A stretch of DNA of 64,000 nucleotides from the NCBI RefSeq assembly GCF_022045235.1, contig NW_027266269.1:8308001-8372000 (forward strand), given 5' to 3'. The position numbers and the translations under genes are program-made. The notes under the pieces were generated by a model. It made no database searches, was not told where the DNA came from, and saw only the letters and a list, made by a program, of their open reading frames with translations. Every line of letters starts with the position of its first letter. Position 1 is the stretch's first letter. This document shows positions 27,257 to 55,988 of the stretch, one piece after another. This DNA is from Haliotis cracherodii. Taxonomy: Eukaryota.

Positions 27257-29560
27257 ATGCTTCCTTTCAGAGGATCTGGTTGTACACTTCAAATAGTCTG
27301 CACTGTTTTTATCGTGGTGGTCACTGCAACATTTGACCAAGAGAGGCAGCCAGTCGGACTGGAAATGTGCAAAGATCACTGTGGCAAATGCAATGATTGC
27401 ACTTTTTGCATATTTCTGATAAAAAGGCTGGCCTGCATAGCGACATGGTCCAAATATCCACTACAGACAAACGGAGAGGAGGCAGTCATTCTAGACATCA
27501 GCAAGGTACCAGGTTTTACTTAGACTCTCGGAATGTCTTGTTAAAGGTTAAGGTTAATGAAACAGAGAATTTCAACATATATTTATTCATTTATATCATT
27601 CTAAGTACTTGGTATGAATGCTGATATGAAATGGATGTTTCTGTCCTAGAAAGCACAAGGATCTATTTCTGAGAGAGATGAGCTTTCTCTTGTTTGTAAT
27701 ACAATCATTGTGTGCGATTCCTTTATGTATATTCTAAGTCATTTTTTATGACTACATTTCTAACATCAATGAGTCTGTCCTAGGAAAGACATGGTTCGAT
27801 TTCACAAAGAAAGGGAAAATGTGAAGAGGAACAATCAAGGATTGTGTTTACCAGATCAAATGACTTTCGATGTATAAAACGTAAGTGTTTAATATTTGCT
27901 CTTGTACTTATTTGAAGACATACTAACAACAAAATGATAAATAATGATGTTTAATCTAATTATTTCGATCCAAGATATCACATGTTTAATAATGTACAAA
28001 CACTTTGAAAGTCATCCCTTTTCCACCTTGCAGTGTCTATTTGAGAAATTTTACATTTGCATAGTTATTTATAGCAACACAGCTATTAACATCATCCTCT
28101 CTCAGTCGACCATATTATGTACCTTGTCACTCTAACTATAAATCATGCTCTCTCGATAAACACATCTCGTGTCGTGACTGAGCCGACATGGGAGTTACAG
28201 TGTTACTTGATCCATGATCGCATTGATGCTGACTAGTGTGTCTGTAAGGATTCAACAAACTAAACATGTCCCCTTCTATCAACTAATTTCCCCTCTGGTC
28301 ATGCGTTGTAATGCAAACAACTGATAATTAGTTGTTATTATGACACTCAATGTATATGATATAGAACGATTCGACAACAGCCAATCATTTGGACATCTGA
28401 GGTGCTTACAGATTACACATGACCCGTGAAGATTCCAAGGTAGAATAGGTCTTCAGCAACCCATACTTGCTGTAAAAGGTGAATATGCTTGTTGTAAAAG
28501 CCAACTAACAGGATCGGGTGGTCTGGCTCGCTGACTTGGTTGATGCATGTCATCGATCCCAATTGCATGGATCGATGCTCATGATATCAATCACTGGATT
28601 GTCTGGTCCAGACTCGATTATTTACAGACTGCCGTCATATAGCTAGAATATACCTGAGTGTGGCTTTCAAACAACAAACCAAACCAAACCAAAAACAGAT
28701 TACACACTTGTTTTTCGATTCATTACCTGATCACCACAAATACATGTTTCTTGTACCCGTCAATCACTATATAAAATATTAAAATTATCTTCTTCCAGTG
28801 AGAACAGAGGAAAAGACAGGTCTCTTGATTGCACCACGTGCCAAAACGCCAATGCTATTACGTTCATTCAACCTTCTGAACAGCTCCATTACAACGTATC
28901 ATCATATAAAACCACGGTATGTCAGTGCCATAGCATATGTAGCAACAATCCAACACGTTTTGATATCTACCTACATACCGAAGAACATCCTATCCTTCTC
29001 ATTACACACTAATGTCAGTGTCACTGTAAAGAAGAAGATATCTGTTAGGGCAATTGCATTGGATGATGCTCAACACCTGGTGTTCCTGGCTACATGGTGG
29101 CCATTTTCCTGTGTAACTAGCATGACACCTGATGGGAGATATTTCAAGAACATCACCTGTCAAATTAATTCACGGGTTATTTTTTGTTGATACAAGGCGG
29201 AATCTATTGTATGTCTCCAACAAGAGAGCTATCTACTCGTTCACATACGATGGGCAGGAGCGACAGCAGATAGCATTATCACATTTAGTGTATGGCATGA
29301 CTCTGAGTGAAAATGGAGACATGATTTATTACAACGACGTATTCAATATCATGGAATTGAACTTGGTCAGAAACGGAACAAAAAGAAAAGTAACTATGAA
29401 AGATATTGTGGTGATTAACATTCTTTATAATAACGGTTTTCTGTACATAAGTTCTCGGAAAAGCAAGTACATCTATGTATGGCATGAGTCAAATTATTCT
29501 CGTTTAAGGGAAGCTTATCCTAGAGGTAAAACTGAATCATTAATAGCTCTGATGCCATAA
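27257..29560 (+). pseudogene. Secreted PAN/apple-like + YWTD/LY-type beta-propeller gene, copy A (exons 27257-27505, 27784-27880, 28799-29560); +1 frameshift at ~29180-29185
   Basis: Same GT/AG exon structure as copy B. A T6 run (gttattttttgttgat vs gttatttgtgttgat in copy B) shifts the frame and gives a stop at 29188-29190. This may be a homopolymer assembly error. Confidence 0.75.
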
Positions 29561-29636
29561 AGTGCTTGACATGATTAAATGAAATTGTATTATAAGGCAC
29601 ACTTGTATATATATGATCTAAATGTTTTTAGAAATA

Positions 29637-31103
29637 TACTCTTCAAAAATAAAGCAAAATCAGTCCAAAATTATTGTGAGTGAATAAAGTGTTGTAAATA
29701 TGATACATAATTAGAAAGCGGGCCATTTCCTGCACAGTTTTACCCAAATGAATGAACATGTCGCCCAAACGAATCACTTACGAGACACGGTCGTTAAAAT
29801 GATCCACATGTGCCCAATTTTTGCACGTGCAACTGAACTTGACTCCGTTGCACGTGCAGTCAGTGTGTGACAAAGGGGTATAAAGCTGCAGGGTGTTCAA
29901 TCCCGTCACTTCACCTGTTGTCTGTATTGCTTGATGAAAGAATGCCACGTGTGAGGCCGGAAAGACTCAACAAACTGCCACAGCCATGAATGTGTCCCGC
30001 GCAACCATCAACAGGCTATGGATGCGGTACTCAACGACAAGAAGTGTTAATGATCGACCTAGAGCAGGAAGACCAAGAGTTACCACCCCTGAACAAGATC
30101 GCTACATCCGACTTCTGCATCTTCGCGATCGCTTTAGAAGAGCTTCACAAACAGTAAACAGCGTACCTGGGTTGAGACGCATCTCCGATCAGACAGTTCG
30201 CAACCGATTGAGAAAAGCAGGCAACCGATTGAGAAAAGCAGGAATCCGAGGACGTAGACCTGTTAGGCGCAACGTCTTGACCCCACGTCATTACGCTGAA
30301 CGCCTACAGTGGAGTAATCGTCATCGTGTCCGACCACATGCATGGTGGAGAACAGTTCTCTTCAGTGACGACTCCCGTTTCATGCTTAACAGGGCTGATG
30401 GAAGAGCCAGGATTTACAGGAGACGTAATGAACGTTAACAGGCCGACCGTTTTGGAGGCGGAAGTGTGATGGTGTGGGCCGGTATCACTCACAATGGCCG
30501 AACAGATCTAGTGCAAGTTGCAGGTGCAATCACAGGCGTACGATACAGGGATGAGATCTTGCAACGTCATGTTGTGCCATTTCTGCACTGTCGTGGAGGG
30601 ATTTTCCAGCATGATAATGCCAGACCGCATATTGCATGTGTGTGTCAGGAGTACCTGCAAAGAAACAACATCAATGTACTACCCTGGCCTGCCCGATCAC
30701 CAGATCTCTCACCGATTGAATATTTGTTGGATGTTCTTGACAGGCGAGTTCGACAACGTTTTCCACCTCAGGGAAACTCCAAGAACTGTTCCAGGTCCTA
30801 CACTGGGAATGACAGAATATCCCACAACGCACAGTGCAACATCTCATTGCTCCTATGGGTAGGAAATGTCAGGCAGTGATAGACGCTAACGGTGGACATA
30901 CCCGGTATTAACAATCTGACACCACCTCGTGCTGTTCATTATCATTGCCGTGTCATTTTGTGATCAAGGTATCAGTCTTATTGGAGACATGATTAGCTTA
31001 TGACCTCAAACCATGTATTTGTTATTGTTCTTTGCGATACTGCCTTTCAAAGTAAAATATATCCCCTTGGACTTTGATGTAACATTTCTTTGTTTGAAGA
31101 GTA
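29637..31103 (+). mobile_element. Tc1/mariner DD34E transposon, decayed transposase, in the 3' UTR of propeller copy A
   Basis: TA TSD; terminal tactcttcaaa/tttgaagagta; GRPRVTT, FSDDSRF, FQHDNARPH-34-SPDLSPIE; internal 21-bp duplication at 30201-30242; empty site in unit 2 at ~56065. Confidence 0.93.
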
Positions 31104-33444
31104 TATAAACTTCCTCAAATGTGCCTGTAGCAACACTATCTGCAGTCTCGAGAAATATCTGCTCACTGTAATTGTCGTTAATTAAAACTGTTAAATGAGA
31201 TCATAATCATTATGCAGGCCAAGTGTCTAAGTCGCTAAGGCCATGACCAGGTTTCGCTGTTCGCAGGGGTCGAAGATCCCGCATCCTTGGTTAACGTACG
31301 AAACTACCGATTGAGTTTAGGTTGCAAACGTAAACCCATCGTCTGTAAGATTCGAATGTAATTCAGTCGTGGGTTCATCAAATTGTTAAAACGCACACGA
31401 TTTCAGGGCTAGGAACACCTCTCATATATGAAAGATACAAAGATATTAAAACGTGAAGACATGAAGTCTTTGGAGTTTAGCCTAGTGGTTAAAGCCGTGT
31501 CACATCCTCTCTAAGCAGGTATCTCTTTGTACCTGGATCATGCTTCAAGCAACTGGGTGAAGGTCATTGCCTGTGGTAGGCCTATGTCGAACTAGAAAAG
31601 AGTTTTGTAACACATCCACACATAGAAGTAGCTGCATCCCCGTCATTTCGTGAAGGCCCCAAAACATTCACACCAGAAATTTGTGTCAGGAACCATTTGA
31701 ACAAATCCGGTGACAGCTATCTGACATCAGCAACTGCACTTCCGGTTTTGTTACAACACCACTAAATGTAGGACAAACAAATGTAAAATGCAGAACACAT
31801 TTGAAACAGAAAATACAATGTTACTTGTTCCTAAGCTATAAGCACTTCCGGTTTGGGAAATCACATACCCCAAGCAGTAAAAAGACATCACGTCCCGGTG
31901 GTAAACATATGTCAAATGCCAGACAGCTGAACAGCAGAAAGTCACATTCATCCGCCTCAATAAGAAAGTCACATTCTTCCAGCTAGCTTAATGGGAAAGG
32001 CACATGCACTTCTAGTTAAGTTACATTGACCCTCAATTGTGTGATAATTTCGTGTTAAAAACATGTGTGCTTTCTCTTACAGTGAGTGAGTGAGTGAGTG
32101 AGTTAAAGCTTTATGTCACATCGGCAATATTTCAGCCAAATCGTGATAAGAGAAATTTCAGTTTTTAATACATATGTTAAAACTAAATTAAAACCTGTCA
32201 TCGATGGACAGTAAATTTCTCTTGTGACCAGAGACCTTGTGCAGGAACAAGGAGACAAAACTACCTTTGGACTGACCATTTCATTCACCTACCCGGGGAA
32301 TATTCCAAATTTCATCTTACAACACTGAACACGCCTTGAACTATCACAGATATAATATGTTTCCTTGTGTATGATCTTGAGAGTTTATTTGACTTTCAAT
32401 ATATGAGAAAACTATTTCAAGAACATCCTAACAACATTTTTACGATGCTGATAGAATAAAACGTAGGACTTATTTGTAACGGATTATTACCAATTGATTA
32501 TAATATAACATAATCCTCGATTGTATTGCCTGTTGTTGTCACGGTGACGTAGATTAAAGCGTTTATGCCGCGGATATACAACTAAATCCGAAGGAACCCC
32601 CAAACAGAAATTTGACTCTGAAGAATGATCAATCCAAAAACATAAGGTTTATTTCCTCGTTCAAAAACGTTTGTTGATGGAGCCATTTGGTAGCATGGAC
32701 TCAGCATTGCATCAACCGCAGTAGTTTGACCTGTAATAGAATAGTATACATTAAACCACAGAGACTGTATTGGGGTTGTGTTGGATTACGTCAGAGTTGC
32801 GACCTTCAAGGCCTCGGCACGAACACAGTATATTGAAAGTCGCACTGTTTACCTATTCACCTACATGTTCTCAAAGTAAGAGCAGACACCACGATGCCTG
32901 CTAAGGTGGAATTACTGTATCTGTCAATGAACACACACAATATGTGCTGCTTTCAAGACTCTTTAACTTTTGGGTCAACAGAGGAATTGTTGGTATACAA
33001 CATATTATATTGTTTCATTGTCAAAACGTTATTACACGTGACCTACCACGCATGTGTGTAATACCCACATTACCATTACCCGTCCTTGGACGACAACCAA
33101 ACCATAAATCATGGCGTCAGACACACATCCAAAATTAATAAAAATATATTACAGTGGTTCAATATGGCGGACTGTGTCTACTCATGAGGGACGCTATGCT
33201 TGATCATACCTTCATAACTTCTTTATCAAGTTTTGGAAGATTTCACAGTGGAAATTCCAATTGCAAAAGATATTGTAGATATGAATTCCACTCACACATG
33301 GTTGGTAACTGACAGAATATTTGTAAATATCTACCTGTACATTATATTTATAACGTAACTAATATAATGTATCAAAGACAACAATATCCAACTTCTCACT
33401 TACCAATACAATGGAAGTTGATCGTTCATTAGATAAGGCAAAGT

Positions 33445-33740
33445 GAGTGAGTGAGTGAGTAAGCAAGTTATTTTTTTATGTCAACAAAGGACAGTAAAAT
33501 AACTAGACTTATCACAAATTATGATTTAAAACAAGCATGGAACCATGAAAATACATCTCTAGACAGAACAATGCATTATATAAACGAGCTATAGATCACC
33601 AGCAATTGAGGGTAGATCACCATACTAGGGACCATGGGGACTTACAGTACCTTTGCTACCTGCATGGACAGATAAGACAAAGATGGCCAAAGAAATCATG
33701 GATGGGCTCAAATTTTTCTACATTTGTCTTTTCTGAATGT
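33445..33740 (-). mobile_element. Short 3' fragment of an I-group LINE
   Basis: Reverse complement matches the 3' UTR of the 33805-40002 element (ggtactgtaagtccccatggtccctagtatggtgatct). Confidence 0.7.
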
Positions 33741-33804
33741 TAAACTGATTTCCTCACATCAACCAATGCTGATATCAGTGACATGAAGATTCCCTTGACA
33801 GTTC

Positions 33805-33862
33805 GGCACTCGTGAAGAGCAACCTCCTCGTGGTGAGTGCTGGGTAACGCTAATAGCTCTTC
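33805..33862 (+). ncRNA. Predicted minimal HDV-like (nested double pseudoknot) self-cleaving ribozyme at the LINE 5' end
   Basis: P1 GGCACUC/GAGUGCU with G1-U wobble; P2 GAAGAGC(A)/(U,A)GCUCUUC; P3 ACC/GGU; L3 UCCUCGU; P1.1 CC/GG; J4/2 GCUAA with the catalytic-position C at 33850. G1 is the first base after the TSD. Confidence 0.85.
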
Positions 33863-36800
33863 CCCCGTGTGGACTCGGAGTAGAATTTGTCCACAGCACC
33901 CCATTGCTGGTCGTAAAAGGCAACCGAATTGGGCAACCTGTTTGCCGTAGGTTGAGCCCCTGTGTCGGTGGAGGAAGGGATTCTGGTGGTTGAGGGCACT
34001 GGAACCAGGAACCAGTGTTCCATTTGCCCAACACACCACTTTGACCCTAACTTCACCTAGAAGGTGGTAGAATGGGCCCGATTCTATCAATCGGCTGGTC
34101 ACGCCATGCCCTGTACATGGACTACCTGATTATTTACATGTCTCACATGTTACAATCTTGTTTCAGGATAAAAAGATGACCTTGACTCTATTTATTATAA
34201 TTTTGCCTAGAGTCGATGCCGGAAGGCGGTGGCTCATGGGCCAATCTGGCTATATATCAACCTCTGGGTTCTATTGACTTCAAATTACTGTCAAGGGCCG
34301 AACCAGCCTGACTTTAAATTCTGTTTGTCAATAATAGCTACCTATGTTTATATTGCTTGAGTATAACGCCTTTGTAACCCTGGTGTTGTAGATTGCTTTC
34401 CTATGCATCATCGTCCTTGTTGACACTCGATGGCGGGTGGGGAGCAGAGGTGTCGAATCAAATAATCACACAATGTCTCACTACAAATCTCCTGGTTCTT
34501 TCAAAGCTAACATACTTCGTCATGTCGATTCTGTTTCGTCTGACGATGAGGTATCGCCTATTGTTGCTGATTCTTGGCCACGATTCATTGTTATTGTATC
34601 GGTCGATGAAACTCCTTTAAAACTTAATCCGTTTGCCATATCAAAGGGCATCCAAAGTACTTGTGGTGAAGTGAAGAACATCAATCGTCTTCGTTCTCGT
34701 TCCATTCTTATAGAATGTGCACGGAGACAGCAATCTATCAACTTACTGGGTATCCAGCAGTTTGTGAACACGCAGGTTGCTGTCTCAGAGCACAGGACAT
34801 TAAATTCTAGTCTAGGTATCGTGAGAGATCGAGCACGATGTCTTGCAGAAATGACAGAAGTAGAGATTGCAGCTGAACTTAAACATCAGGGTGTCACTGC
34901 TGTCAAGCGATTCACACGAAAAAAAGAAGATGGAAATATTATTAAAACACAAACCTACCTTTTCACATTCTCAACGTCTACTGTTCCATCATCAATAAAA
35001 GCTGGATACTTCAACATCGGAGTGGAGGTTTATGTTCCAAATCCACTCCGGTGTTTCTACTGTCAACACTTTGGTCGCGGGGCCAAATCTTGCACAGCCA
35101 AGACGAGGTGCTCCCGTTGCAGTGGTCCCCATGAGGGCACAGAATGCTCAAATGAGATCAAATGTGCTAACTGCAGTGGTGAGCACTTGTCATCGTCCAA
35201 ATCATGCCCGATTTTCGATCGCGAATCGAAAATACTTAAAATCAAACATACAAATAACATTACCTACTCTGACGCCAAAAAAAATCCTTTTACCCTCTCA
35301 GACCCCTTCCAATAAATCATATTCAGCTGCAGTCTCTTCTCCGAGTCCAGGAAAAAAATCACCATGACATCCACTCACTGTCAGACTGATATTTCGTGGA
35401 TCACCAATGACCAGATCATCATTGATGAAGCACCTACATTATCTCCAAACAAGCCAACAACAATGACGTCTTCATCTCAAACAGAAAACCTGCAACCTTC
35501 ACATAGTCAACCCACTGAACCAGAACCTATACAGGAATCCGAATCAGTTCAGGGTGAAGCCCATCTGTCAAAAAACCAAAAAACCAAAACGCAAATGAGG
35601 AGAAAGGTCAGAGCACTCCAACACTTGGAGGAGCCTTCTCCTGACCCGTGACCTGTAACGGTTCATAATTTATTTGAACCATTGGGCATGAAGGTCACTC
35701 CTTCCCTCCCAGTACATGGGATGTCCCTCCCAGTACATGGGATGTCCCTCCCACTCGTTCACCTGTCCCCGTTGATCCTCCATGAGTGGAGCTACTAACT
35801 TAATACAATGGAATTGCAGAGGACTTAGGAACAATTTTAATGATCTACAGTTATTATCACAGGATTTTAAACCATCAGCTTTTAGCTTACAAGAAACATA
35901 CCTGAAAAATACAGATAAATTTGATTTTCGTCAGTACAATTCGTATCATTCGTTTTCACCTCCAGGTGAAAAAGCCACTGGTGGCGCTTCCATTTTGGTG
36001 TGGCGGGATGTCATCCATAGCCCCGTCCCTCTTAAATGCAACCTTCAAGCTGTTGCTGTCCGTATGTCTTAACATATTACCTTCACACTTTGCTCTTTAT
36101 ACATTTCACCATCGTCTACTCTTCAGCAGTCTGATCTTCAGGATTTGTTTGATCAGCTCCCAAGGCCCTGTGTCATTATGGGCGACCTAAATGGACCTAA
36201 CCCCCTCTGGGGAAGTAGAGATACCAACAACAAAGGGAAAATCCTGGACGACTTAATTTAAAAAAACAATTTACGCCTATATAATGATGGATCCGACACA
36301 TATTTACATCCCGCTACTGGAACTTATTCTGCTCTTGATTTGTCGCTCACAGATCCAAATATATATAACGAATTTGAATGGTCAGTCCACAACGATCTAT
36401 GTGGAAGCGACCATTTCCCCACAGTACTTTCTGCTATTAAACCGAATGATGAACCGCCTGTGTCAAGGTGGAATTTTAAAAGGGCCAACTGGCCATTATT
36501 TCAGACACTTTGTACTGACAAATTGACATCTGACATTTTTATTAACGTCCCTGATCCTATTCAGTTGTTCACGGCCATACTGAATAATATTGCTGATGTA
36601 ACTATTCCTAAGTCCTCTATTAAACCACACATTCGTAAACCATGGTTTACAGATGATTGCAAACAGGCTAGGAAGGGTAGGAGGAAGGCTGAAAAATGCT
36701 TTCGCCGTCATCCTACAGGTCACAATTTAAATACTGTAAAGATAAATGGTGCCAAGGCTCGACGTACGTTTAAACAAAATCGGCAACAGTCTTGGAGAAA

Positions 36801-39800
36801 TTTTGTATCAAAGATTAATCCCCGTACACAAATGACAAAGGTGTGGAACATGGTACAAAGAATCAAAGGGAAGGGTTCAAATTCTGGCGTTCATCATCAT
36901 AAAGATGATCATAGTCTACTAACTGACAAAGTAGACATCGCAAATTTTTTGGGCGAAACTTTAGCCAAACACTCTTCGTCTTCCAATTATAATCCCAAAT
37001 TTCAGTAATATAAAAATCAACAAGAAAAGAAAACTATTAATTTTAATTCAGATAATGGTGAAGACTACAATGAAATATTTTCACTACATGAGCTCAATAC
37101 TGCCCTAGCGCAAGCCCATGATACCGCAACAGGAGCTGATAATATCCACTATCAGCTCCTTAAACATTTACCCAATCCATGTCTTGAAACACTTTTAAAT
37201 ATGTTTGATAATATTTGGACCACTGGACACTTTCCTCCTTCCTGGCTCAATGCTATTGTTATCCCTATACAAAAACCTGGCCGGGATCATACTGATCCAT
37301 TTCATTATCGACCTGTTTTATTAACTAGCTGTGTATGTAAAACCATGGAACGCATGGTCAATAAACGATTAGTATGGTTTTTAGAAACAATGAATCTTAT
37401 TACCAATATTCAATGTGGTTTCTGCAAAAATCGCAATACTATTGACCATCTGGTTCGTTTAGAATCATTCATTAAAAATTCCATTGTAAATAACCAGCAT
37501 GCTGTATCAATCTTTTTTGATCTTTAAAAAGGTTATGATACAACATGGAAACATGGTATTTTAAAAGATTTGCACGACTTCGGTTCACGAGGCCGTTTGC
37601 CTCATTTTTATATCTCAATTTTTATCGGACAGACAATTTCAAGTTCGTGTTGGATCAACCCTGTCTGATCATTATAATCAGGATCAGGGAGTTCCACAAG
37701 GCAGTATTTTATCTGTCACATTGTTCAGTATAAAAATAAATAGTTTATCAAAAGTATTAAATGACTCAATTGATGAAGTCATTCTTTGTGGATGATTTTA
37801 ATATTTCATGTTGTGGTAAAAATATGCGTACTATTGAACGCCAATTACAGTTGTGTCTTAATAAAATTCATAAATGGTGTCTTGAGAATGGATTTAAGTT
37901 CTCACAGACCAAGACCAATTGTATCCATTTTTGTCGGAAATATAAACCTCATAAAGATCCTGAACTCTTTTTAGATGGCACTCCAATCAAGATTGTAAAA
38001 GAAGCAAAATTTTTAGGGTTAATTTTCGACCATCATCTAACTTTTTTGCCAAATATTAAATATCTAAAGACAAAATGCCTGAAGGCCATAGATTTGTTAA
38101 AAGTCGTCTCAAATTCAAAGTGGGATGGGGATCAGAAAACCCTTCTTCACCTCTATCGATCATTGATCCGTTCTAAATTGTACTATGGCTCCATTGTGTA
38201 TGCTGGAGCTTGCCAGAGTAATTTAAAAAAGCTGGATCCAATCCACCATCAAGGATTAAGACTTTGTCTTGGTGCTTTTCGGACTTCCCCAGTTGACAGC
38301 CTCTATGTTGAGTCTGATGAACACTCCTTCGAACAACGCCATATTAAATTGTCTCTCCAGTATATTACTAAATTACGTTACAATCCCTCAAATCCTGCTT
38401 ATGACTCCGTTTTTAATCCCCTATATGAAGAATTGTTTCAGAAGAAACCAAAGATGGTTCCTCCACTTGGTATTCGGCTCAAATCTCATATTAGTGCTGC
38501 AAATCTTGATTTGGACATCACCTCTCCTTACCGACTTTTGTCTGCTCCTCCCTCGCAGTTGGTGAGGCCAGAAGTGGACATTTCCCTCACGTGTTATCTT
38601 AAATCTGACATAAACCAGCTATTCTATCAACAGGAATATTTACAATTATGAAATAAATATGACACTCGCCATTCAATCTATACTGATGGGTCTAAGGATG
38701 GTGGCAAAGTAGCAAGTGCCACTGTCGTTGGATCAAAAATAATATCCTCCAGAATACCAGACAATAGCTCTATTTTCACTGCTGAGGCCAATGCTATTCT
38801 TACAGCATTGATATCCATTCAACAACAGTCTGCATCATTATCATCTTTTCTGATTTTCTTTCTTGCCTTCAGGCACTAAATAATGTGTCTTCGACTCATC
38901 CACTGATTTTAGATATTATGGAACTGTACAATGATCTTTCCACTGGCCAATTCGACATCGTCTTTTGTTGGTTACCCAGTCATATGGGCATAAAAGGTAA
39001 CACAATGGCTGATGCTGCTGCAAAAGCAGCACTCAACAAATCTGTGACACCACTTCTGATCCCATACAGTGATTACAAACCTGTGATTCGATGTTACATC
39101 CGAGATCTGATGCATAAGAAGTGGGGCACCCAAGCAGGTATCAATAAATTACATCAAATTAAACCAAATATCGGTTACACCTACTTGGGTTGTCAGTCCA
39201 GATTTGAAGAGGTAATTTTACGACGATATCGTATTGGCCATAGTAGATATACTAATGAATATGTATTAAAAGGTGAGGATCCTCCGTTTTGTATCCCTTG
39301 TGATGAGAGAATCACAGTCAAGCATGTCCTGCTTGACTGTATTGATTTTTCCATCACAAGGGATAAATATTTTAATGTCAAAACAGTGAAGGACCTTTTT
39401 AGAAATGTTAATTCACATTTAATCATTAACTTTTCTAAAAAGATATAGAGCTAATTCACAAATTTGGATGTAAAAAGTTATGTATTTTATAAATCGGTAG
39501 TGTATACTTAGTAACTGAGACTGTTCGTGGCTATACCCCTGACGGGGGTTGAAGTAGCGTAAAATTATTGTCCCCCTGAGAGGGTATGTAAGCCAACCTC
39601 TTTCAAAGAATATTTATATCTACCTCTATTTTAACTGCAGAATATTTGTTAACTTTTAATATCTGGCTAAACTCGCCATAATCACCAGTAACTTGGGGAA
39701 GTGCAAATCCTGCTGTGGAACCATGCAATTGGCAGAGGTACCGTAAGTCCCCTTGGTCCCCAGTATGGTGATCTTAACCTTGTTGCTGGCGATCTATAGC

Positions 39801-40002
39801 CCCATTTTTATATTGTGTCGTACCTTAATAATCAGATGTTTTTAGTGTTCTACAACTAGTTTTAACTTAATACGTGATATATTGCTAGTTATTATACTGT
39901 CCCTCGTCGACAGTTTTAATGACTATTGTATAACTTGTTCAAGTCACATTATGGCTGAAATATTGCCGGCGTGACTTTAATTAAACTCTCTCACTAACTC
40001 AC
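33805..40002 (+). mobile_element. Full-length I-group (Nimb/I-like) non-LTR retrotransposon, inactivated
   Basis: 14-bp TSD tcccttgacagttc at 33791-33804 and 40003-40016; empty site in unit 2 (~60820). ORF1 (34437-~35650) has 3 CCHC knuckles. ORF2 (35782-39448) has APE (WNCRG, LQET, GDLN, SDH), RT (GVPQGSILS, FVDD), RNase H (YTDGSK, WLPSH.GIKGN..AD) and C-terminal CxxC..H..C, with several stops and frameshifts; (ACTC)n-like tail. Confidence 0.95.
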
Positions 40003-41022
40003 TCCCTTGACAGTTCTTCAAAACTCCTTGTCACCTCACCAGTCTCAGCCGATATCAGTGATATGAAGATTCCCTTGACAGTGCTTCAAGACTCAAGCAG
40101 TTTAATCAGAACTCAACTTGTTCAGAAAACAGATCTATCTTAGACTTAGTTACTGATGAACAACTAGAGTTTTTAAGACAAAACGTTAACTGAATATGGT
40201 TCACGCAAGAACCCGCAAGTGGAACATAATAACATAACGAACATAAACTTCGTCTAGACTAAGGACGAGTCATGACAGATGAGGCCTTCTCCACACTAAG
40301 CAAATGAAAGTGGACGGCGATCTTGTCGTAAAAATATTTGAATTCTCAACAAACCAAAAGTATCGACAGTCATGAACATCAACACACCCGAAATTTTCTG
40401 TATAGTAAATGAGAATCACGAACATGATAAAACAATTTTGAGCTAGAATGAAATTTTAATTGGGAAATGGTTGCCCAAACACCGGTACTGTTACAACACA
40501 ACACTGACTATAAGTATAGCACTGCTAAACTGGAACAATGTCTGTCTGTCTGTCTGTCTGCCTATTTCTGGTGTCTCCCGCCGTGTTATTGCTGGAATAT
40601 TGCTAAAAGCGGCGTAAAACCATACTCACTCACTGAAGCTATATGGCGGTGACAGGAAGGCTTCAGTGTTTGGGAGTCTTCACATTTTCCGAAAAGTTCT
40701 TGGTGTGTATGGCAAGGAAGCACATCCCGGGATTAGTCCAATTCGCTGTCTGGTTTGATTGTTTATTTGTTATTTACCACTGCACCCAGCAATTTTCCAG
40801 CTATCTGACGGCGATCTGTACATAATGACATCTGGACAAGACAATCCAGTGATTGCCATCATGTGCATCTATCCACGAAACTGGGATACAATGACATGCA
40901 TTAACCAGGTAAGCGAGCAGTTATGCTTCTCACGGTTATTAGACCTTTTCTAAACCGGATCTTCATGGGTCGATAATACATCTAAGGGCTCATAAGGAAA
41001 CTATAGCTACTTGACTTCTCAC

Positions 41023-41237
41023 AATTTCAGTATCATTACCTGGAACAGTGTTGTAGGCGTATCCGTAGGGCGTCAGCAGATACCGGGAATAGCAGTGGAC
41101 GGAGATGTAGGCGGAGATGACGCCCTTTGTCGCCTTGATGGTGCTGACCAGGTCATGCATGTTGCGACTCTCCGCCTCAGAGAAGATGCTGGGGCCTCGA
41201 TATGTGTCTGATGCACAGCTGCCAGAAAACCCACCTC
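41023..41237 (-). pseudogene. Orphan exon of an M14A zinc carboxypeptidase (CPA/CPB-like), unit 1
   Basis: cttcag acceptor and gtgaga donor; GGFSGSCASDTYRGPSIFSEAESRNM...ISAYISVHCYSRYLLTPYGYAYNTVPGNDTEI matches the C-S-D-T-Y-x-G-P-x-x-F-S-E and Y-I-S-x-H-S-Y-S-Q...PYGY motifs (third zinc His). No other exons were found. Confidence 0.8.
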
Positions 41238-44803: not shown

Positions 44804-47800
44804 CTCGCTGACTTGGTTGATGCATGTCATCGTATCCCCATTGCGTGGATCGATAATCATAATGTCAATCACTTGATTGTCTGGTCTTTATTATTTATAA
44901 ACCACCGTCATATGGCTGGAATATTGCTGCGTGCGGCGTTGCAACACACAAACAAAACAAGCATGCTCAAATACTACAGTTCTTAATACCACACTTCTCC
45001 ATGGTATATATTCCAGGCTGTTTTATTTTAACCAAAACTAGAATACTTACAACATGCACGGTTCACCACACGAATCGTACTTTCGCTACCGTCAGTGCCC
45101 TCATAAACACACCTACTCATGTGTAATGTGCTTTTAATGCCATTAGCAAGCGTTTACTTGTTTGATAGCCTATATGATCGTCACATCGTGGCACATTGTA
45201 AACAGCTGAGTCTCTGTCAGTGACTAAAAGAATGAAAACATACCAAGCTGATAGAGTACGATGACATGACATCAGCCAAGTCAGACCACCAGCCCCAAAT
45301 ATGTTGACAAGCAATTCGATGTTGGGTATGAAGTCTAGCCCCTGTCTCATAGGAACCATGCTTGTCATGCAGGTTTGTTGAGAGACAAGGTCATGACTTA
45401 CTAAATTTGAAACATGATGTACACCTTCATATAAATAAAATGTAGCACTGGAACCAATGTTGTTAAAATCAGATCTGGCTATGGCTACTGCTAAACAAAG
45501 ATCCCAAGACAATACCATTCGAGGTCATATCAGACTGACCTTGCGCGAACTTTGACTGACCAATGAAATGACTGACAAGAAGTCGACAAATTAAGGAAAT
45601 CAGAAGGTAATATCAAATTTGCGATGACGCTTCGAAACATATTTTGACAAATTCTTGATAAAAGATTTGAAACCTGAACAAAACAACATTCTGAAATGGC
45701 TAATATATGCTTTAGATTGTGTGTCGTTAAGCCCATAACTATCGTTCAGAATACCCCATGTTAAAGTTTTCCATGTTGCATGATTAGAAATCATATTCCG
45801 ACTGGCAATTTGGTGATCTGGTAAGCAACGCACTAATTGGTTGGATGAAAGTTCGTTCTGACGTGCCCCTAATGAGATGTCTTCAGATCTTTATTTAGCA
45901 GTATCGAGAACTAAGATCTTATTTTCAAGAGGTTGCACTGTAGCCAACTTTAAGCAAACAGCAAATAGTGAATTAGTTAACGTTCACCTCACGACGGACG
46001 CATTTCAGTGTGTACAGTGACAAGAACAGTTAATCTGATTATGTGTGTTTGTTTGCTTGTTTGTTGTTTAACGCCGCACTCGGCAATATTCCAGCTATAT
46101 GACGGCGGTCTGTAAATAATCGAGTTTGGACCAGACAATCCAGTGACTGATAACAAGAGCATTGATCCACGCAAATGGGATACGATGACATGCATCAACC
46201 AAGTCAGCGAGTGTGACCACACGATCCCGTTAGTCGCCTCTTACGACAAGCATAGTCGCGTTTGACGGCAAGCATGAGTTATTGAAGACCTATTCTACCT
46301 CTGATCTTCACGGGTCCCAAATAAAAGATATGTAAACGATGGACACGATTCCCCTAATAACAACCTGGATTGGCTCTACTCATAATCTCAGTTGAATTTC
46401 AACTTTCAAAACGCGAAGAGAACCTGAAACTTCACAAGAAATCCACTGAATCCATTGTTTGTTTCTTTGCATCAGGGTCCATCTATTTACTTACACAGTA
46501 TTCTGGTCAAAACAATGCCGAAAAAGGTCATGGGAAAACAAAGCTTAATCCAAGGATACTTTCAATCAATACCAATATTTTGTCCTATTTAATTTCTTTA
46601 TCTATGTCTTTGATCTGAAACCAAAATCTTTCAGCTTTAATGTTTTAAAGTGAAACAGAATCTTATTTACTACGAACCTTTTAGTGCAATGAAGCGACGA
46701 CCAGAGTGTGGGATAAATTGCCTTTTCACCACACAGAGATTCATTAGTGGGATCAAACTGGGAAGAAACCACGTTAAAACGATATACGTGAGTAGTTCCT
46801 TTTTCAAATCGTGCATCCCTTCTAGTATATATGTTACATATGAGTATATAATTACAAATGGCAATGCGTCAGTCATGTATTATGTATCTGTTATTTCATC
46901 TGGCTATTTAAAAAGATTGCAAGATGTTTAAGGACGATTTCTTCTTGGGCAAATCTCTGGGAAATTCCATCAGCATTCTGTGGGGAGGAATACTGGGATT
47001 CGGAGCAGTACAGCTAATTTCAGTTGACGTTCAGAGACGTTGAGCCAACGTTATTTTGAGCGTCAGACCTGCGTACACTTTGAACTCAATCTCATCAGTG
47101 AGTGAGTGAGTGAGTGAGGTAGTGAGTGAGTGAGAACACGTCACATCGGCAATATTTCAGCTATATCGTGATGAGATTAGACATTGTCTCCGAAGGACAT
47201 TACAATAACTAGATTATCACAGATTTAAGGAAAAACTAGTAAATGTAAAAGGAAAATGTAAAAGAATAAACTATCATCAAACAACACAGTTTATTATATG
47301 CAACTTTAGCAATCAATTGAAATAACAAATATGATGCAATTAAAACTAAGGTAGGAATAACATACTTTGAAAGACACAGCCTTACAAAGCCCACTCAGGG
47401 CACAATAATTTTTCAGTCCTTCAACCCCCGTCAAGGGCACAGCCATAAACACTCTCAGTTAATAGTCAATATGTTTAATAGTGTGTAAGGAGAAGACAAG
47501 AGCTGATATGGAGAGATAATATCTTGATCTAGATTAGCAGCATTATTGTGTGATTTGATCCGAACCAGCTTTGGTTTCCTCTGAATCAGTTCTTGATAGA
47601 GAGGATGAGTCATTGTCAGTGATTAGTGGGATTGGTTGGTTTGTTGGTTTGTTGTTTAACACCGCACTCGGCAACACTCCAGCTATATGATGGCAGTCTG
47701 TAAGTAATCGAGTCTGGACCAGACAATCCAGTGATTGACATCATCGTGATTGGGATAGATGACATGCATCAACCAAGTCGGCGAGAGCCTGACCACACGA

Positions 47801-53185: not shown

Positions 53186-53407
53186 GGGGCACAGGTGGCC
53201 CAGTCGTATAGGGCGCCGCGATTCGCTGTGCAGCGTTGCGTCCCTTAGGCACGTCAGAGACCTATGATTGTGGGTTCGAATCCCAGTTCGCCCTGATCAT
53301 GTTTCTAGGTTTGTCAGCACAATACCCATTCTCGTGGGTTTCACACGCTGTGATATAACTGGAATAATATTAAAAGTGGCGTTCAACCAAATTCACCCAC
53401 TCACTCA
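53186..53407 (+). mobile_element. tRNA-derived SINE
   Basis: ggggcacaggtggcccagtcg A-box-like sequence, ggttcgaatccc B-box, cactcactca tail. Confidence 0.8.
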
Positions 53408-53744
53408 TTATGCAATGTGACACGGGAAATATATTATGTTCTTGTATCTGCTGCTCAGAATGTACTAATTATAAATGTTCTATAAGTCTGCGTACGGAAA
53501 TAAAGATTGACTCTAAACATGCTGAATAAAGTAGTGTCATAATCTTGCACCCCTTTGGACTCAAACATGGGCAATAAGCATGGTACGCATTACCACCCTG
53601 TGATATTCACAGTGGAATATTAGCGCAGTCTTTGTAATATTTCAAACTTATTTCACCATACAACTACCACAGTCACTGACAATAGCAATATTTTACTTGT
53701 AATAGCAATATTTTGTGGTTGCAGCAACATCCAGGTTCAGAAAG

Positions 53745-55988
53745 ATGCTTCCTTACAGAAGATCTGGTTGTACGCTTCAAATAGTTTGCACTGTTTTTAT
53801 CGTGGTGGTCACTGCAACATTTGACCAAGAGAGGCAGCCAGTCGGACCGGAAATGTGCAAAGATCACTGTGGCAAATGCAATAATTGCACTTTTTGCGTA
53901 TTTCTGATAAAAAGGCTGGCCTGCATAGCGACATGGTCCAAATATCCACAACAGACAAACGGAGAGGAGGCAGTCCTTCTAGACATCAGCAAGGTACCAG
54001 GTTTTACTTAGACTATCGGAAATGTCTTGTTAAAGATAAAGGTTAATGAAACAGAGAAGTTCAACTTATATTTATTCATTTATATTATTCTAAGTACTTG
54101 GTATGAATACTGATATGAAATGGATGTTTCTGTCCTAGAATGCACAAGGATCTATTTCTCAGAGAGATGAGCTTTCTGTTGTTTGTAATGCAATAATTGT
54201 GTGCGATTCCTTTATGTATATTCTAAGTAATTTGTATGACTACATTTCTAACATCAAAGAGTCTGTCCTAGGAAAGACATGGCTCGATTTCACAAAGAAA
54301 GGGAATATGTGAAGAGAAAGAATCAAGGATTGTTTTTACCAGATCAAATGACTTTCGATGTATAAAACGTAAGTGTTCAATATTTGCTCTTGTACTTATT
54401 TGAAGACATGCTAACCACAAGATGATAAATAATGATGTTTAATCTAATTATTTGGATGCCAGATTTCACATGTTTAATTATGGCAAAAACTTTGAAAGTC
54501 GTCCTTTTTCCACCTTGCAATAGCTAGTTGACAAAGGTTACATTTGCATAGTTATTTATAGCAACACAGCTATTAACATCATTCTCTCTCAGTCAACCAT
54601 ATTATGTACCTTGTCACTCTAACTATAAATCATGCTCTCTCGATAAACACATCTCGTGTCGTGACTGAGACGACATGGGAGTTACAGCGTTGATTCATGA
54701 TGGTAATGATGCTGACTAGTGTATCTGTAAGGATTCAACAAACTAAGCATTTCCTCTGCTATCAATTAATTTCCCCCAACATGCTTTGTAAAGCAAACAA
54801 CTGATAATTTGTTGTAATTATGACACTCAATGTATACGAAACAGAACGATTTGACTACAGTCAATCATTTTGCCCACGAACATCTGAGGCGCTTATAGAT
54901 TGCACACGACCCGTGAATATTCCGGGATAGAATAGGTCTTCCTAAACCCATGCTTGCCGTAAAAGGTGACTATGCTTGTTGTAAAAGCCGACTAACAGGC
55001 TCACTGACTTGGTTGATGCATCAACTGGATTGCCTGGTCCAGACTCGATTATTTACAAATCGCCGTCATATATCTGGAATATTGCTAATTTTGGCTTTAA
55101 ACAACAAACCAAACCAAACCAAACATGGATTACACACTTATTTTTCGATTCATTACCTGATCACCACAAATACATGTTTCTTGTACCCGTCAGTCACTAT
55201 ATAAAATATAAAATTATCTTCTTCCAGTGAGAACAGAGGAAAAGACTGGTCTCTTGATTGCAGCCGAGGCCTTTGCGCAGGTACCATTACGTGCATTCAA
55301 CCTTCTGAACAGGACCATTACCACGTATCGTCATATAAAACCACGGTATGTCAATGCCATAGCATATGTAGCAACAATCCAACACGTTTTGATGTCTACC
55401 TCCATACAGAAGAACATCCTATCCTTCTCATTACATACTAATGTCGGTGTCACCGTAAGGAGGAAGATATCTGCTGCGGCAATTGCAGTGGATGATGCTC
55501 AACACCTGGTGTTCCTGGCTACATGGTGGCCATTTTCCTGTGTAACTAGCATGACACCTGATGGGAGATATTTCAAGAACATCACCTGTCAAATTAATTC
55601 ACGGGTTATTTGTGTTGATACAAGGCGAGATCTATTGTATGTCTCCAACAAGAGAGCTATCTACTCGTTCACATACGATGGGCAATGGCGGAAGCGGATA
55701 GCATCATCACATAGAGTGTATGGCATGACTCTGAGTGAAAATGGAGACATGATTTATTATGGCGACCAAGACAATATCATGGAATTGAACTTGGTCAGAA
55801 ACAGAACAAAAAGAAAAGTAAATGAGAGACATATTTGGGTGAGGAACATTCTATATAATAAAGGTTTTCTGTACATCAGTTCTCGGAAAAGCAAGTACAT
55901 CTATGTTGTGCATGAGTCAAATTATTCTTATTTAAGGGGAGCTTATCCTAGAGGTACAAGTCAGTCATCGATAGCTCTGGTGCCATAA
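53745..55988 (+). CDS. Secreted PAN/apple-like + YWTD/LY-type six-bladed beta-propeller protein, copy B, 368 aa (exons 53745-53993, 54272-54368, 55228-55988)
   Basis: Hydrophobic signal-like N-terminus (LQIVCTVFIVVVTA); C-x3-C-x5-C-x11-C cysteine spacing typical of the PAN core; blade repeats AIAYV, AIAVDDAQHLVFLA..MTPDGR, ICVDTRRDLLYVS..FTYDGQ, GMTLSENGDMIYY, ILYNKGFLYIS; phases 0/0 and 1/1 fit; 1107 nt open. Confidence 0.82.

What the first reader, a model, noticed from the sequence alone, without database searches (positions are those of the whole stretch)
27257..55988. Tandemly amplified secreted PAN-like + beta-propeller genes with clustered amino-acid diversification: candidate recognition/immune family
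Seen: two paralogues (a third unit begins at the window end) encode signal peptide + C-x3-C-x5-C-x11-C module + basic six-bladed LY/YWTD-like propeller, with no transmembrane segment. By eye, exon 3 differs at ~47 of 253 residues but at only about ten synonymous-only codons; exons 1-2 differ at 10 of ~115 residues. Changes come as multi-nucleotide clusters next to the first and second strands of successive blades (IAPRAKTPML/IAAEAFAQVP, STYIP/STSIQ, SVRA/SAAA, YYNDVF/YYGDQD, TMKDIVVI/NERHIWVR, KTESL/TSQSS). Established: the 4-1 and 2-3 loops form the ligand-binding top face of beta-propellers. Inference: this is a diversifying-selection array of soluble ligand-binding proteins (pathogen, mucus or gamete recognition), the best candidate here for an undescribed system.
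Basis: partly seen in the sequence, partly recalled or inferred. Interest (0 to 1): 0.8.

Follow-up and report, generated by a model that had tools for sequence, protein, structure and literature searches.

The report
Abalone secreted PAN–propeller gene family, diversifying
Two neighbouring abalone genes, one of them broken, belong to an unnamed family of about fifty probably secreted proteins whose six-bladed propeller changes fastest on the face that related receptors use to bind partners, which makes the family a candidate recognition system with no known target and no expression evidence yet.

Summary
The window has two copies of a 3-exon gene inside a tandem segmental duplication. Each encodes a signal peptide plus PAN/apple-like module, a short Cys-loop exon, and a one-exon, basic, EGF-less six-bladed YWTD-type propeller.

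- Correction 1: copy 1 has a 1-base frameshift in exon 3, and a LINE piece cuts its upstream homology.
- Correction 2: no third unit starts in the window.

The own genome (Haliotis, probably H. cracherodii) has at least 144 propeller matches and 50 PAN-exon matches.

In 10 close paralogues, 8 of them intact, my own codon-model code gives M1a vs M2a 2dlnL = 55, with ω about 7 at 11.5% of sites. This survives a neutral-hotspot control, tree splitting and removal of the broken copies. It recurs in a second clade.

Selected sites sit in the 2-3 and 4-1 loops on one face (ω 3.85, against 0.6 on the other face). Synonymous change is not raised there. The PAN exon is conserved (ω 0.2-0.4).

No RNA evidence was found, and function is inferred only. 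All named relatives are "uncharacterized protein" of Haliotis. The scan met this family before on other DNA of this genome (s1-839773, s1-826233; sister family s1-826173).

The parts
27038..45267 (+). Tandem duplication unit 1 (gene copy 1 plus downstream flank, enlarged by transposon insertions and a 70-copy minisatellite)
   Evidence: Self-BLAST collinear blocks with 53525-63855
27257..27505 (+). Copy 1, exon 1: signal peptide plus PAN/apple-like Cys module (83 codons, phase 0)
   Evidence: Translation and GT donor; 92% identical to copy 2 exon 1
27784..27880 (+). Copy 1, exon 2: 32 codons plus 1 nt, basic Cys-loop linker (C-x17-C)
   Evidence: AG/GT borders, open frame 0
28799..29560 (+). 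Copy 1, exon 3: propeller, broken by one surplus base in the T-run 29180-29185 (frameshift; pseudogene or homopolymer assembly error)
   Evidence: Two overlapping ORFs; alignment to copy 2; two-piece match with TGA in the own-genome search
26601..27011 (-). LINE-like fragment that ends copy 1's upstream homology 219 nt before its ATG
   Evidence: 72% match to 36933-37350 on the other strand; upstream p-distance of copy 1 to all other paralogues 38-40% against 0-13% among the others
53525..63855 (+). Tandem duplication unit 2
53745..53993 (+). Copy 2, exon 1: signal peptide plus PAN/apple-like module
54272..54368 (+). Copy 2, exon 2: Cys-loop linker
   Evidence: the same C..C loop is present in H. 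rubra homologues P0056, P0082, P0083
55228..55988 (+). Copy 2, exon 3: intact six-bladed YWTD-type propeller, 252 codons plus stop
   Evidence: ORF 55227-55988; model pLDDT 92.1, pTM 0.90, 24 strands; Foldseek nidogen/LRP6/LDLR E 1e-14 to 1e-11, TM 0.80-0.87
29986..30879 (+). Broken Tc1/mariner-type transposase inserted just 3' of copy 1; absent from unit 2
   Evidence: HTH_Tnp_Tc3_2 E 1.4e-9 and DDE_3 E 1.4e-8 in two different frames; gap in unit collinearity
34437..39448 (+). Non-LTR retrotransposon ORFs in unit 1; absent from unit 2
   Evidence: RVT_1 E 1.9e-5; collinearity gap 33468-40096
42046..44789 (+). 39-bp minisatellite, 70.4 copies (unit 1); counterpart 63267-63435 has 4.3 copies
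   Evidence: Tandem Repeats Finder

Best explanation
These are members of a Haliotis-restricted multigene family of probably secreted, N-glycosylated proteins. Each has three parts: a constant N-terminal PAN/apple-like domain, a short disulfide loop, and a basic, EGF-less, six-bladed YWTD (LDL-receptor class B type) beta-propeller. The family grows by tandem segmental duplication; units are about 20-26 kb, and arrays lie in both orientations over about 0.9 Mb of contig C6. Copy 2 in the window is an intact member. Copy 1 is probably a decaying duplicate. Shown here: the propeller, not the PAN module, is the fast-evolving part, and amino-acid replacement is favoured (ω > 1) in the 2-3 and 4-1 loops, which lie together on one face of the propeller. 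Inferred: that face is the ligand-binding top face, as in LDLR/ApoER2 and in WD40 recognition proteins. On this reading the paralogues form a germline repertoire of soluble binders with different specificities, held by a common PAN handle that binds a constant partner (a glycan, the matrix, or another subunit). The ligand class (pathogen, gamete or other fast-evolving partner) is unknown.
For: Anatomy. 10 close paralogues share exon sizes and splice borders, and 8 of 10 are intact. The propeller model is confident and matches nidogen G3, LRP6, LDLR and LRP4. The family profile hits bona fide LRPs carrying Ldl_recept_b (P0012 E 1.7e-62; Pfam PF00058 E 1e-199). For PAN: homologue P0073 has PAN_1 at E 2.7e-6, above the curated cut-off. 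C38, C42 and C60 are invariant and C48 nearly so in 18 sequences. The 11 best of 48,161 chains aligned to the exon-1 model are all PAN/apple (Z 4.8-6.9, rmsd 2.1-2.6 over 50-56 residues). For secretion: an N-terminal hydrophobic stretch, no other TM-like segment, and 3-5 sequons at conserved places with sequon-keeping changes (NRT/NSS, NRT/NGT).

Functionality. About 245 substitutions fall on the exon-3 tree. 8.8 nonsense changes are expected under neutrality and 0 were seen (P about 1.5e-4). Exon 3 has 3 gap blocks in 787 columns, against 8 in 286 for intron 1. PAN exon ω is 0.2-0.4 even where the propellers are only about 50% identical.

Selection.
- Exon-3 ω exceeds 1 in 35 of 40 between-lineage pairs, and M0 ω is 1.29.
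- M1a/M2a, M7/M8 and M8a/M8 each give 2dlnL about 55 (p about 1e-12; ω 7 at 11.5% of sites).
- 25 of 25 data sets simulated under M1a gave 2dlnL of 4.65 or less.
- A class with free ω beats a neutral hot-spot class (2dlnL 12.4, p 4e-4; ω 5.0, rate only 1.4x).
- The test stays significant without the two broken copies (38.6), in each half on its own tree (37.5 and 18.5), and with five lineages (47.2).

Structure.
- 11 of 60 codons in the 2-3 and 4-1 loops have P>0.5, against 8 of 192 elsewhere (Fisher p 9e-4). Only 1 of 56 codons in the opposite-face loops does.
- Partition ω is 3.85 for those loops (p 2.4e-4 against 1), 0.60 for the opposite loops and 1.02 for strands.
- Pooled dS is not raised in those loops (0.071 against 0.105 and 0.093).

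Replication. In a second clade of 7 paralogues, 2dlnL is 33.4. There 26 of 60 top-loop codons are selected against 16 of 191 elsewhere (p 5e-9), and top-loop ω is 1.86 (p 0.015). In a young third cluster, variable sites are again enriched on that face (10 of 60 against 11 of 191, p 0.014).

Literature. The d-a and b-c loops form the top interaction platform of propellers and carry the selected sites in the Podospora NWD genes (PMC1805685, passages read). The top face of YWTD domains is a binding interface in LDLR/ApoER2 (PMC5452030, passages read).
Against: No transcript evidence. No listed run is on record as RNA. No contig skips either intron. Pieces of the run guessed to be RNA cross the exon 2/intron 2 and intron 2/exon 3 borders unspliced. 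The close subfamily is absent from a 5.8-billion-protein collection that does hold other H. cracherodii RefSeq proteins: only 1 hit, 50% identical, among 196 candidates. The genes may therefore be unannotated or little expressed. 2 of 10 close copies are broken. Strands evolve at ω about 1, and M2a puts about 60% of sites at ω = 1, so much of the domain is barely constrained. A neutral hot-spot model already recovers most of the M1a-to-M2a gain (-2240.0 against -2261.5 and -2234.0). Exon 1 and the two exon-3 halves give partly different trees, which indicates recombination or gene conversion; this can inflate site tests. 18 of 47 replaced codons in the W1-W2 pair have 2 or more base changes, and multi-nucleotide mutation is not modelled. 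The site models are my own code with NEB posteriors, not codeml or HyPhy. The top/bottom assignment comes from strand order and the LY-repeat register (recalled), not from coordinates. The exon-1 model is only moderately confident (pLDDT 60 overall, 65-77 over residues 30-83) and its best Z is below 8. The hydrophobic N-terminus, about 18 residues long, could be a signal anchor rather than a cleaved signal peptide.
Confidence: 0.7

Rival explanations
1. Relaxed constraint only. The copies are young, redundant duplicates, many of them on the way to pseudogenes, that drift nearly neutrally. The apparent ω > 1 is noise, and loops merely tolerate change better than strands.
For: Whole-domain ω is close to 1 (M0 1.29). 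Strand ω is 1.02. 2 of 10 copies are broken. Copy 1 also lost its upstream homology. No RNA evidence. Absent from protein collections.
Against: Relaxation cannot push ω significantly above 1, yet top-loop ω is 3.85 (p 2.4e-4) while the equally exposed loops on the opposite face have ω 0.60. 0 nonsense changes were seen against 8.8 expected, and there are few indels. The PAN exon is under purifying selection. Sequons are conserved. The same pattern recurs in a second clade.
Confidence: 0.15
2. Mutational artefact. Short-tract gene conversion between paralogues, or multi-nucleotide mutation, or local hot spots create clusters of differences that codon models misread as positive selection.
For: Changes are clustered: 18 of 47 replaced codons have 2 or more base changes. 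Trees disagree between exon 1 and the exon-3 halves. The neutral hot-spot model gains 21 lnL units over M1a. Introns also show some clustered differences.
Against: Synonymous divergence is not raised in the variable loops (0.071 against 0.093-0.105). Free ω in the hot class is favoured (p 4e-4) with only a 1.4x rate. A mutational process should not pick one face of the fold in two clades. The halves analysed on their own trees stay significant.
Confidence: 0.1
3. The proteins are real but are not a recognition repertoire. For example they could be matrix, shell or mucus structural components, or type II membrane proteins, whose surface evolves fast for reasons other than ligand diversity.
For: There are no functional data at all. 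The N-terminal hydrophobic stretch is long, about 18 residues. YWTD propellers also occur in matrix proteins such as nidogen.
Against: One-face concentration of selected sites, with a conserved second domain, is the pattern of binding-surface diversification. Homologues P0082 and P0083 have ordinary short signal peptides.
Confidence: 0.05

Closest known systems
YWTD / LDL-receptor class B beta-propellers (nidogen G3, LRP5/6, LRP4, LDLR, ApoER2, megalin)
   Same: Six blades of four strands. Foldseek E 1e-14 to 1e-11 and TM 0.80-0.87. The family profile finds LRPs with Ldl_recept_b. In these receptors the top face is a binding surface (PMC5452030, passages).
   Different: There is no EGF module after the propeller: the protein ends one residue after the last strand. 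There are no LDL-A repeats and no membrane anchor. Pfam PF00058 does not reach E <= 1 on the window's own protein. The YWTD motif is degenerate (LVFLAT, LLYVSN, MIYYGD, FLYISS). It is a single propeller in a protein of about 370 residues, present as dozens of fast-evolving paralogues.
PAN/apple domains (plasminogen/HGF N domain, factor XI and prekallikrein apple, apicomplexan MIC4 and SML-2 lectins)
   Same: A helix packed on a small sheet, with the four core Cys spaced C-x3-C-x5-C-x11-C. The 11 best structural matches are all PAN/apple. Homologue P0073 passes Pfam PAN_1.
   Different: The window's own exon 1 gets no Pfam hit at E <= 1. It has two extra Cys. The structural Z is only 4.8-6.9, on a model of moderate confidence.
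Podospora anserina HNWD/het-d/het-e genes (WD40 propeller recognition repertoire)
   Same: A multigene family in which positively selected residues sit in the d-a and b-c loops on the top of a beta-propeller (PMC1805685, passages read). Here they sit in the 4-1 and 2-3 loops.
   Different: Those are intracellular NLR-like proteins with WD40 repeats that diversify by repeat shuffling and concerted evolution. Here the proteins are extracellular, with a YWTD fold, and diversify between whole-gene tandem duplicates.
Other abalone families noted by this scan: coiled-coil stalk plus propeller (s1-826173) and PAN-fronted families (s1-826233, s1-839773)
   Same: Same genome. The propeller is of the same superfamily, including the C-terminal ..LIP/..LVP ending. 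The same SP-PAN front was reported 629 kb upstream.
   Different: The coiled-coil members are single-exon genes of about 480-580 codons with a helical stalk in place of PAN. The galectin-ended PAN family was not examined here.
Expanded secreted recognition families of molluscs such as FREPs and C1q-domain proteins (recalled, no call)
   Same: Lineage-specific tandem expansion of secreted binding domains with fast-evolving surfaces.
   Different: Different folds. For those families, expression and immune roles have been shown experimentally. Here nothing is known about expression.

Membership tests
YWTD / LDL-receptor class B beta-propeller | Six four-stranded blades closing into a propeller | tested here: met
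   24 strands in the model, pLDDT 92.1, pTM 0.90
YWTD / LDL-receptor class B beta-propeller | Structural match to solved YWTD propellers | tested here: met
   1npe_A E 1.1e-14, TMq 0.84; LRP6, ApoER2, megalin, LRP4 and LDLR follow
YWTD / LDL-receptor class B beta-propeller | Sequence homology to Ldl_recept_b repeats | tested here: inconclusive
   Pfam PF00058 gave no hit at E <= 1 on the window's protein. The 38-sequence family profile does hit LRP-type proteins (P0012 E 1.7e-62, P0013 E 3.5e-60), which carry PF00058 at E 1e-199 and 7.5e-108. 27 of 30 Atlas feature hits are Ldl_recept_b sets.
YWTD / LDL-receptor class B beta-propeller | YWTD motif on strand 2 of each blade | tested here: inconclusive
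   Only degenerate forms are present (MIYYGD, LLYVSN, FLYISS, LVFLAT). That the motif sits on strand 2 is recalled.
YWTD / LDL-receptor class B beta-propeller | C-terminal EGF module packed against the propeller, as in the LDLR family and nidogen | tested here: not met
   The stop codon follows the last strand directly (..IALVP*)
PAN/apple domain | Pfam PAN_1/PAN_4 match | tested here: not met
   Window exon 1 gave 0 families at E <= 1. It is met only in homologue P0073: PAN_1 E 2.7e-6, 27.6 bits against a cut-off of 21.4.
PAN/apple domain | Conserved core cysteines | tested here: met
   C38, C42 and C60 are invariant and C48 is conserved in 90% or more of 18 sequences, including P0073 and P0152
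PAN/apple domain | Helix-on-sheet PAN fold | tested here: inconclusive
   Model pLDDT is 65-77 over residues 30-83. The best Foldseek E is 0.35, but the top rows are PAN proteins. VIA-align ranks 1-11 are all PAN/apple at Z 4.8-6.9, below the tool's own caution line of 8. In the profile-against-PDB sequence search, the 5 hits on the Cys module are PAN/apple-bearing chains at E 0.08-0.36, which is not significant.
Secreted protein | Cleavable signal peptide, no other membrane segment | tested here: inconclusive
   Hydropathy is 2.08 at residues 8-26, with V-x-A before residue 24. There is no other segment above 1.6. Sequons are conserved. No SignalP-type predictor was available.
Gene family under diversifying selection | A site class with ω > 1 that survives controls, located on a coherent surface | tested here: met
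   (own code; recombination only partly controlled)
Expressed gene | Spliced transcript | tested here: inconclusive

The most novel reading that the evidence does not exclude
Abalones carry a germline repertoire of dozens of soluble receptors that use a YWTD beta-propeller face as the variable recognition surface, on a constant PAN/apple handle. This would be a recognition system on a scaffold not known to serve this role in animals. It might be used against pathogens (black abalone is devastated by a bacterial withering disease; recalled) or in gamete or settlement recognition.
Probability: 0.3. Interest if true: 0.8.

Novelty: new variant of a known kind. Interest (0 to 1): 0.62.

Why it matters
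If the proteins are expressed, this would be a new example of how an invertebrate builds binding diversity. The diversity would come from whole-gene tandem duplication plus positive selection on one face of a YWTD propeller. That fold is otherwise known from conserved receptors (LDLR, LRP5/6, nidogen) and is not known as a hypervariable scaffold. The family is large: at least 144 propeller matches and 50 PAN-exon matches in one genome. Among named relatives it is confined to Haliotis, and every one of them is annotated only as "uncharacterized protein". It also gives a testable split of labour, with a constant PAN module and a variable propeller face. For abalone biology (disease resistance, fertilisation barriers) it names candidate genes. 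For genome annotation it shows a block of well-preserved genes that seem to be missing from the protein sets.

Tried and rejected
- Pfam on the window's own exon products gave nothing usable. The domain calls therefore rest on folds, profiles and homologues.
- The search for homologous proteins with exon 3 found one protein only, so no close orthologues from other species could be used for a between-species test.
- The RNA route gave nothing. No run on record as RNA holds the gene. The laid contigs showed no intron-skipping joints and were dominated by a dispersed repeat in intron 2.
- I considered that the propeller might be an NHL/TRIM-type propeller, which is common in molluscs. I rejected this because the best structural matches are all YWTD, the profile hits are LRPs, and the distant paralogues carry a coiled coil plus signal peptide, not RING/B-box.
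- I considered that exon-1 conservation is due to gene conversion alone. Exon-1 dS (0.27-0.38) is somewhat below exon-3 dS (0.46-0.52) in the second clade, but the main difference is in dN (0.08 against 0.39). Some conversion does occur, for example the L031-L036 grouping in exon 1.
- The third, young cluster had too little divergence for the site test (2dlnL 1.2).
- Three literature searches found no paper on this family. Supplements were not consulted. Subscription journals are outside the library.
- Joined step left out: the spliced full-length protein was never assembled, searched or folded. Every search, fold and codon analysis was done exon by exon.

Full report
WHAT IS THERE.

The window is G000:C6:8308001-8372000. 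Earlier scan notes call the genome an abalone. I have two independent supports. A Haliotis cracherodii RefSeq protein (P0152) lies on a contig of 40,864,218 bases, exactly the length of C6. And all 12 named relatives that I looked up are Haliotis "uncharacterized protein" entries; 6 further entries are unnamed Logan proteins.

Self-comparison shows a tandem segmental duplication. 27038-28512 matches 53525-54999 at 89.4%, and 28590-29638 matches 55020-56068 at 90.1%. Further collinear blocks run to 44902-45267 against 63482-63855. Unit 1 is longer because it has extra insertions:
- a broken Tc1/mariner element at 29986-30879,
- a non-LTR retrotransposon at about 34437-39448,
- 70.4 copies of a 39-bp minisatellite, against 4.3 copies in unit 2.

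GENE MODEL.

Each unit carries a 3-exon gene with canonical borders and fitting phases.
- Exon 1 has 249 nt. Its product begins MLPYRRSG, followed by a hydrophobic stretch, then C-x3-C-x5-C-x11-C.
- Exon 2 has 97 nt and encodes a basic C-x17-C loop.
- Exon 3 has 2 nt plus 252 codons plus a stop.

Copy 2 is intact. Copy 1 has one surplus base in the T-run 29180-29185, so exon 3 reads as two ORFs. Its homology to the other paralogues also stops 219 nt before the ATG, at a LINE-like fragment. Copy 1 is therefore probably a decaying duplicate, though a homopolymer assembly error cannot be excluded.

No third unit begins in the window. The window end is the tail of unit 2. The next propeller sequences are two 3' relics of about 330 nt, in inverted orientation and outside the window. 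One of them has a stop codon.

THE FAMILY.

- Exon 3 finds 144 places in the own genome at E <= 0.001, with 150 of 168 candidates scored.
- Exon 1 finds 50 places. 46 are on C6, and 4 have stops inside.
- Nine other copies are 76-91% identical to copy 2 in the propeller.
- Five of them sit at 20-22 kb spacing on the minus strand at 7.91-8.00 Mb.
- Minus-strand members lie to the left (7.68-8.12 Mb) and plus-strand members to the right (8.29-8.60 Mb).
- In the 10 close paralogues, all exon sizes and splice borders are kept, and 8 of 10 reading frames are intact. The exceptions are copy 1 and L032, which has a 7-base insertion in exon 2.
- More distant members on other contigs are single-exon genes with a signal peptide, a long helical stalk, and the same propeller ending in ..CLIP.

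FOLDS.

Everything was done exon by exon. The joined protein was never built, searched or folded.

Propeller.
- The model, built from a 38-sequence alignment, has pLDDT 92.1, pTM 0.90 and 24 strands.
- Foldseek puts nidogen G3 first (E 1.1e-14, TM 0.84), followed by LRP6, ApoER2, megalin, LRP4 and LDLR.
- Pfam does not see Ldl_recept_b in the window's protein.
- The family profile finds 7,384 proteins, among them giant LRP-type proteins that carry PF00058.
- 27 of 30 Atlas feature hits are Ldl_recept_b sets.
- There is no EGF module after the propeller.

Exon 1.
- Pfam finds nothing.
- Homologue P0073 (H. rufescens) has the same architecture and passes PAN_1.
- The core Cys align across 18 sequences.
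- The exon-1 model has pLDDT 65-77 over residues 30-83, with a helix at 35-44 and three strands.
- Its 11 best matches among 48,161 chains are all PAN/apple domains, at Z 4.8-6.9.
- Foldseek gives no significant hit, but its top rows are the same families.
- I call this module PAN/apple-like with moderate confidence.

Other features. The propeller is basic (pI 9.7-10.0). It has 3-5 sequons at conserved positions. There is no hydrophobic segment beyond the N-terminus.

ARE THE GENES ALIVE?

- The exon-3 tree holds about 245 substitutions. About 8.8 nonsense changes are expected under neutrality, and none is seen.
- Exon 3 has 3 gap blocks in 787 columns. Intron 1 has 8 in 286.
- Exon 1 stays 81-84% identical in paralogues whose propellers are 49-51% identical. 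There dN is 0.08-0.09 against 0.38-0.40, and ω is 0.2-0.3 against 0.7-0.9.

Against this, I found no transcript. No run on record as RNA holds the gene. No contig skips an intron. Pieces of the run guessed to be RNA cross exon borders unspliced.

SELECTION.

Exon 3 diverges about as fast as the introns. For the W1-W2 pair, the p-distances are 10.3% for exon 3, 5.8% and 9.6% for introns 1 and 2, and 3.6% for exon 1. Nei-Gojobori ω for exon 3 exceeds 1 in 35 of 40 between-lineage pairs, with a range of 0.61-1.95. The 5 pairs of near-identical copies give 0.15-0.38 or are undefined.

No codeml or HyPhy was installed, so I wrote GY94/F3x4 site models. The results on the 10 close paralogues:
- M0 ω is 1.29.
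- lnL is -2261.46 for M1a and -2233.97 for M2a.
- M7/M8 and M8a/M8 agree, with 2dlnL about 55 and p about 1e-12. ω is about 7 for 11.5% of sites.

Controls:
- 25 of 25 data sets simulated under the fitted M1a gave 2dlnL of 4.65 or less, against 54.5 for the data under the same procedure.
- A neutral hot-spot class (ω = 1, rate 5.8x) reaches -2240.04, so rate variation explains much of the gain. Freeing ω in that class still improves the fit (-2233.82, p 4e-4), with ω 5.0 and a rate of only 1.4x.
- Without the two broken copies, 2dlnL is 38.6.
- The first and second halves on their own trees give 37.5 and 18.5.
- Five lineages only give 47.2.

Trees from exon 1, the introns and the two halves differ in part. 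Recombination is therefore real and only partly controlled.

WHERE THE SELECTED SITES ARE.

I used the model's strand order and the LY-repeat register. That the YWTD-like strand is strand 2 is recalled, not tested.
- Of the 19 sites with P>0.5, 11 lie in the 2-3 and 4-1 loops, 1 lies in the 1-2 or 3-4 loops, and 7 lie in strands.
- Five of the 7 strand sites are near the start of a strand 1 or at the end of a strand 2, next to those loops.
- Fisher's test for 11 of 60 against 8 of 192 gives p 9e-4.
- With the partitions fixed in advance by structure, ω is 3.85 in the 2-3/4-1 loops (p 2.4e-4 against 1), 0.60 in the opposite loops and 1.02 in strands.
- Pooled dS is not raised in the variable loops (0.071 against 0.105 and 0.093), while dN is three times higher (0.197 against 0.062 and 0.082). 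This argues against hot spots or imported tracts.

Replication:
- A second clade of 7 paralogues (74-82% identical, plus one pair at 97%) gives 2dlnL 33.4. There 26 of 60 top-loop codons are selected against 16 of 191 elsewhere (p 5e-9; 12 insertion columns left out). Partition ω is 1.86 (p 0.015), 0.53 and 0.91.
- A young third cluster is underpowered for the site test (2dlnL 1.2). It still shows the same enrichment of variable sites, 10 of 60 against 11 of 191 (p 0.014).

Alternate loops of a propeller lie on opposite faces, so the one-face result does not depend on which face is named the top. The d-a and b-c loops form the top interaction platform of propellers. They carry the selected sites in the Podospora NWD repertoire (PMC1805685, passages read). 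The top face of YWTD domains is a binding interface in LDLR/ApoER2 (PMC5452030, passages read).

HOW IT PROBABLY WORKS.

Shown:
- a constant PAN-like module and a variable propeller,
- one-face positive selection,
- preserved reading frames,
- tandem birth and death of copies.

Inferred:
- the proteins are secreted,
- the variable face binds ligands that differ between paralogues,
- the PAN module binds something constant.

Unknown: the tissue, the ligand, and whether the role is immune, reproductive or something else.

COMPARISON AND NOVELTY.

The domains are known. So is the principle of a tandem family with a positively selected binding surface; the nearest parallel on a propeller is the fungal NWD family. 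What is new:
- the architecture: signal peptide, PAN/apple, Cys loop, and a single EGF-less YWTD propeller,
- its expansion to dozens of genes in Haliotis,
- the use of a YWTD face as the variable surface.

Three literature searches found nothing on the family. Supplements and subscription journals were not covered.

This scan has met the family before on other DNA of the same genome. s1-826233 has a follow-up that confirms a PAN-plus-YWTD gene 629 kb upstream. s1-826173 describes the sister coiled-coil family.

VERDICT.

Interest is 0.62.

Noticed in passing
42046-44789 and 63267-63435: A 39-bp minisatellite sits downstream of each gene copy, with 70.4 copies in unit 1 and 4.3 in unit 2. It stays open in several frames (ORFs up to 670 codons, 13-residue repeat). 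Whether that is the same repeat was not checked.
   Followed up: partly
28421-28702 and 54908-55131 (intron 2 of both copies); also 4170-4430, 19875-20148, 46031-46316 and others: A dispersed repeat of about 270 bp (SINE-like) lies inside intron 2. It has many copies in the window and word depths of 1e5-1e6 in all four laid runs.
   Followed up: no
29986-30879: A Tc1/mariner-type transposase is split over two frames (HTH_Tnp_Tc3_2 and DDE_3). It is inserted right after copy 1's 3' end and is absent from unit 2, so it arrived after the duplication.
   Followed up: partly
33468-40096 (ORFs 34437-39448): A non-LTR retrotransposon with a reverse-transcriptase fragment is present only in unit 1. 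This was not tested here.
   Followed up: no
G000:C6 7.68-8.12 Mb (minus strand) and 8.29-8.60 Mb (plus strand): The PAN-propeller genes form two arrays that point away from each other, with the window at the start of the plus-strand array. Further clusters lie at 10.6-10.9, 28.5, 33.8-33.9 and 37.5 Mb of C6 and on C23 and C51.
   Followed up: partly
G000:C6:8379355-8379564 (+) and 8394846-8395055 (-), outside the window: Two relics of the last third of the propeller exon plus its 3' flank lie in inverted orientation about 15 kb apart (84% identical to copy 2's 3' end). The first has a stop codon.
   Followed up: partly
L032 (G000:C6:7953548-7958306), exon 2: An otherwise well-kept paralogue, 91% identical to copy 2 in the propeller, has a 7-base insertion in exon 2 that shifts the frame into a stop.
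   Followed up: partly
L054 and L055 (G000:C56:12599125-12603315; C23:45413938-45419451): Distant family members carry long internal tandem repeats ahead of the propeller. One has a repeat of about 28 residues containing CTCPSSREEEAEEVLKPENAP. The other is an 1,154-codon open frame with repeats of about 60 residues.
   Followed up: no
16660-16856: A run of 197 N (assembly gap or masked stretch). It was left alone.
   Followed up: no
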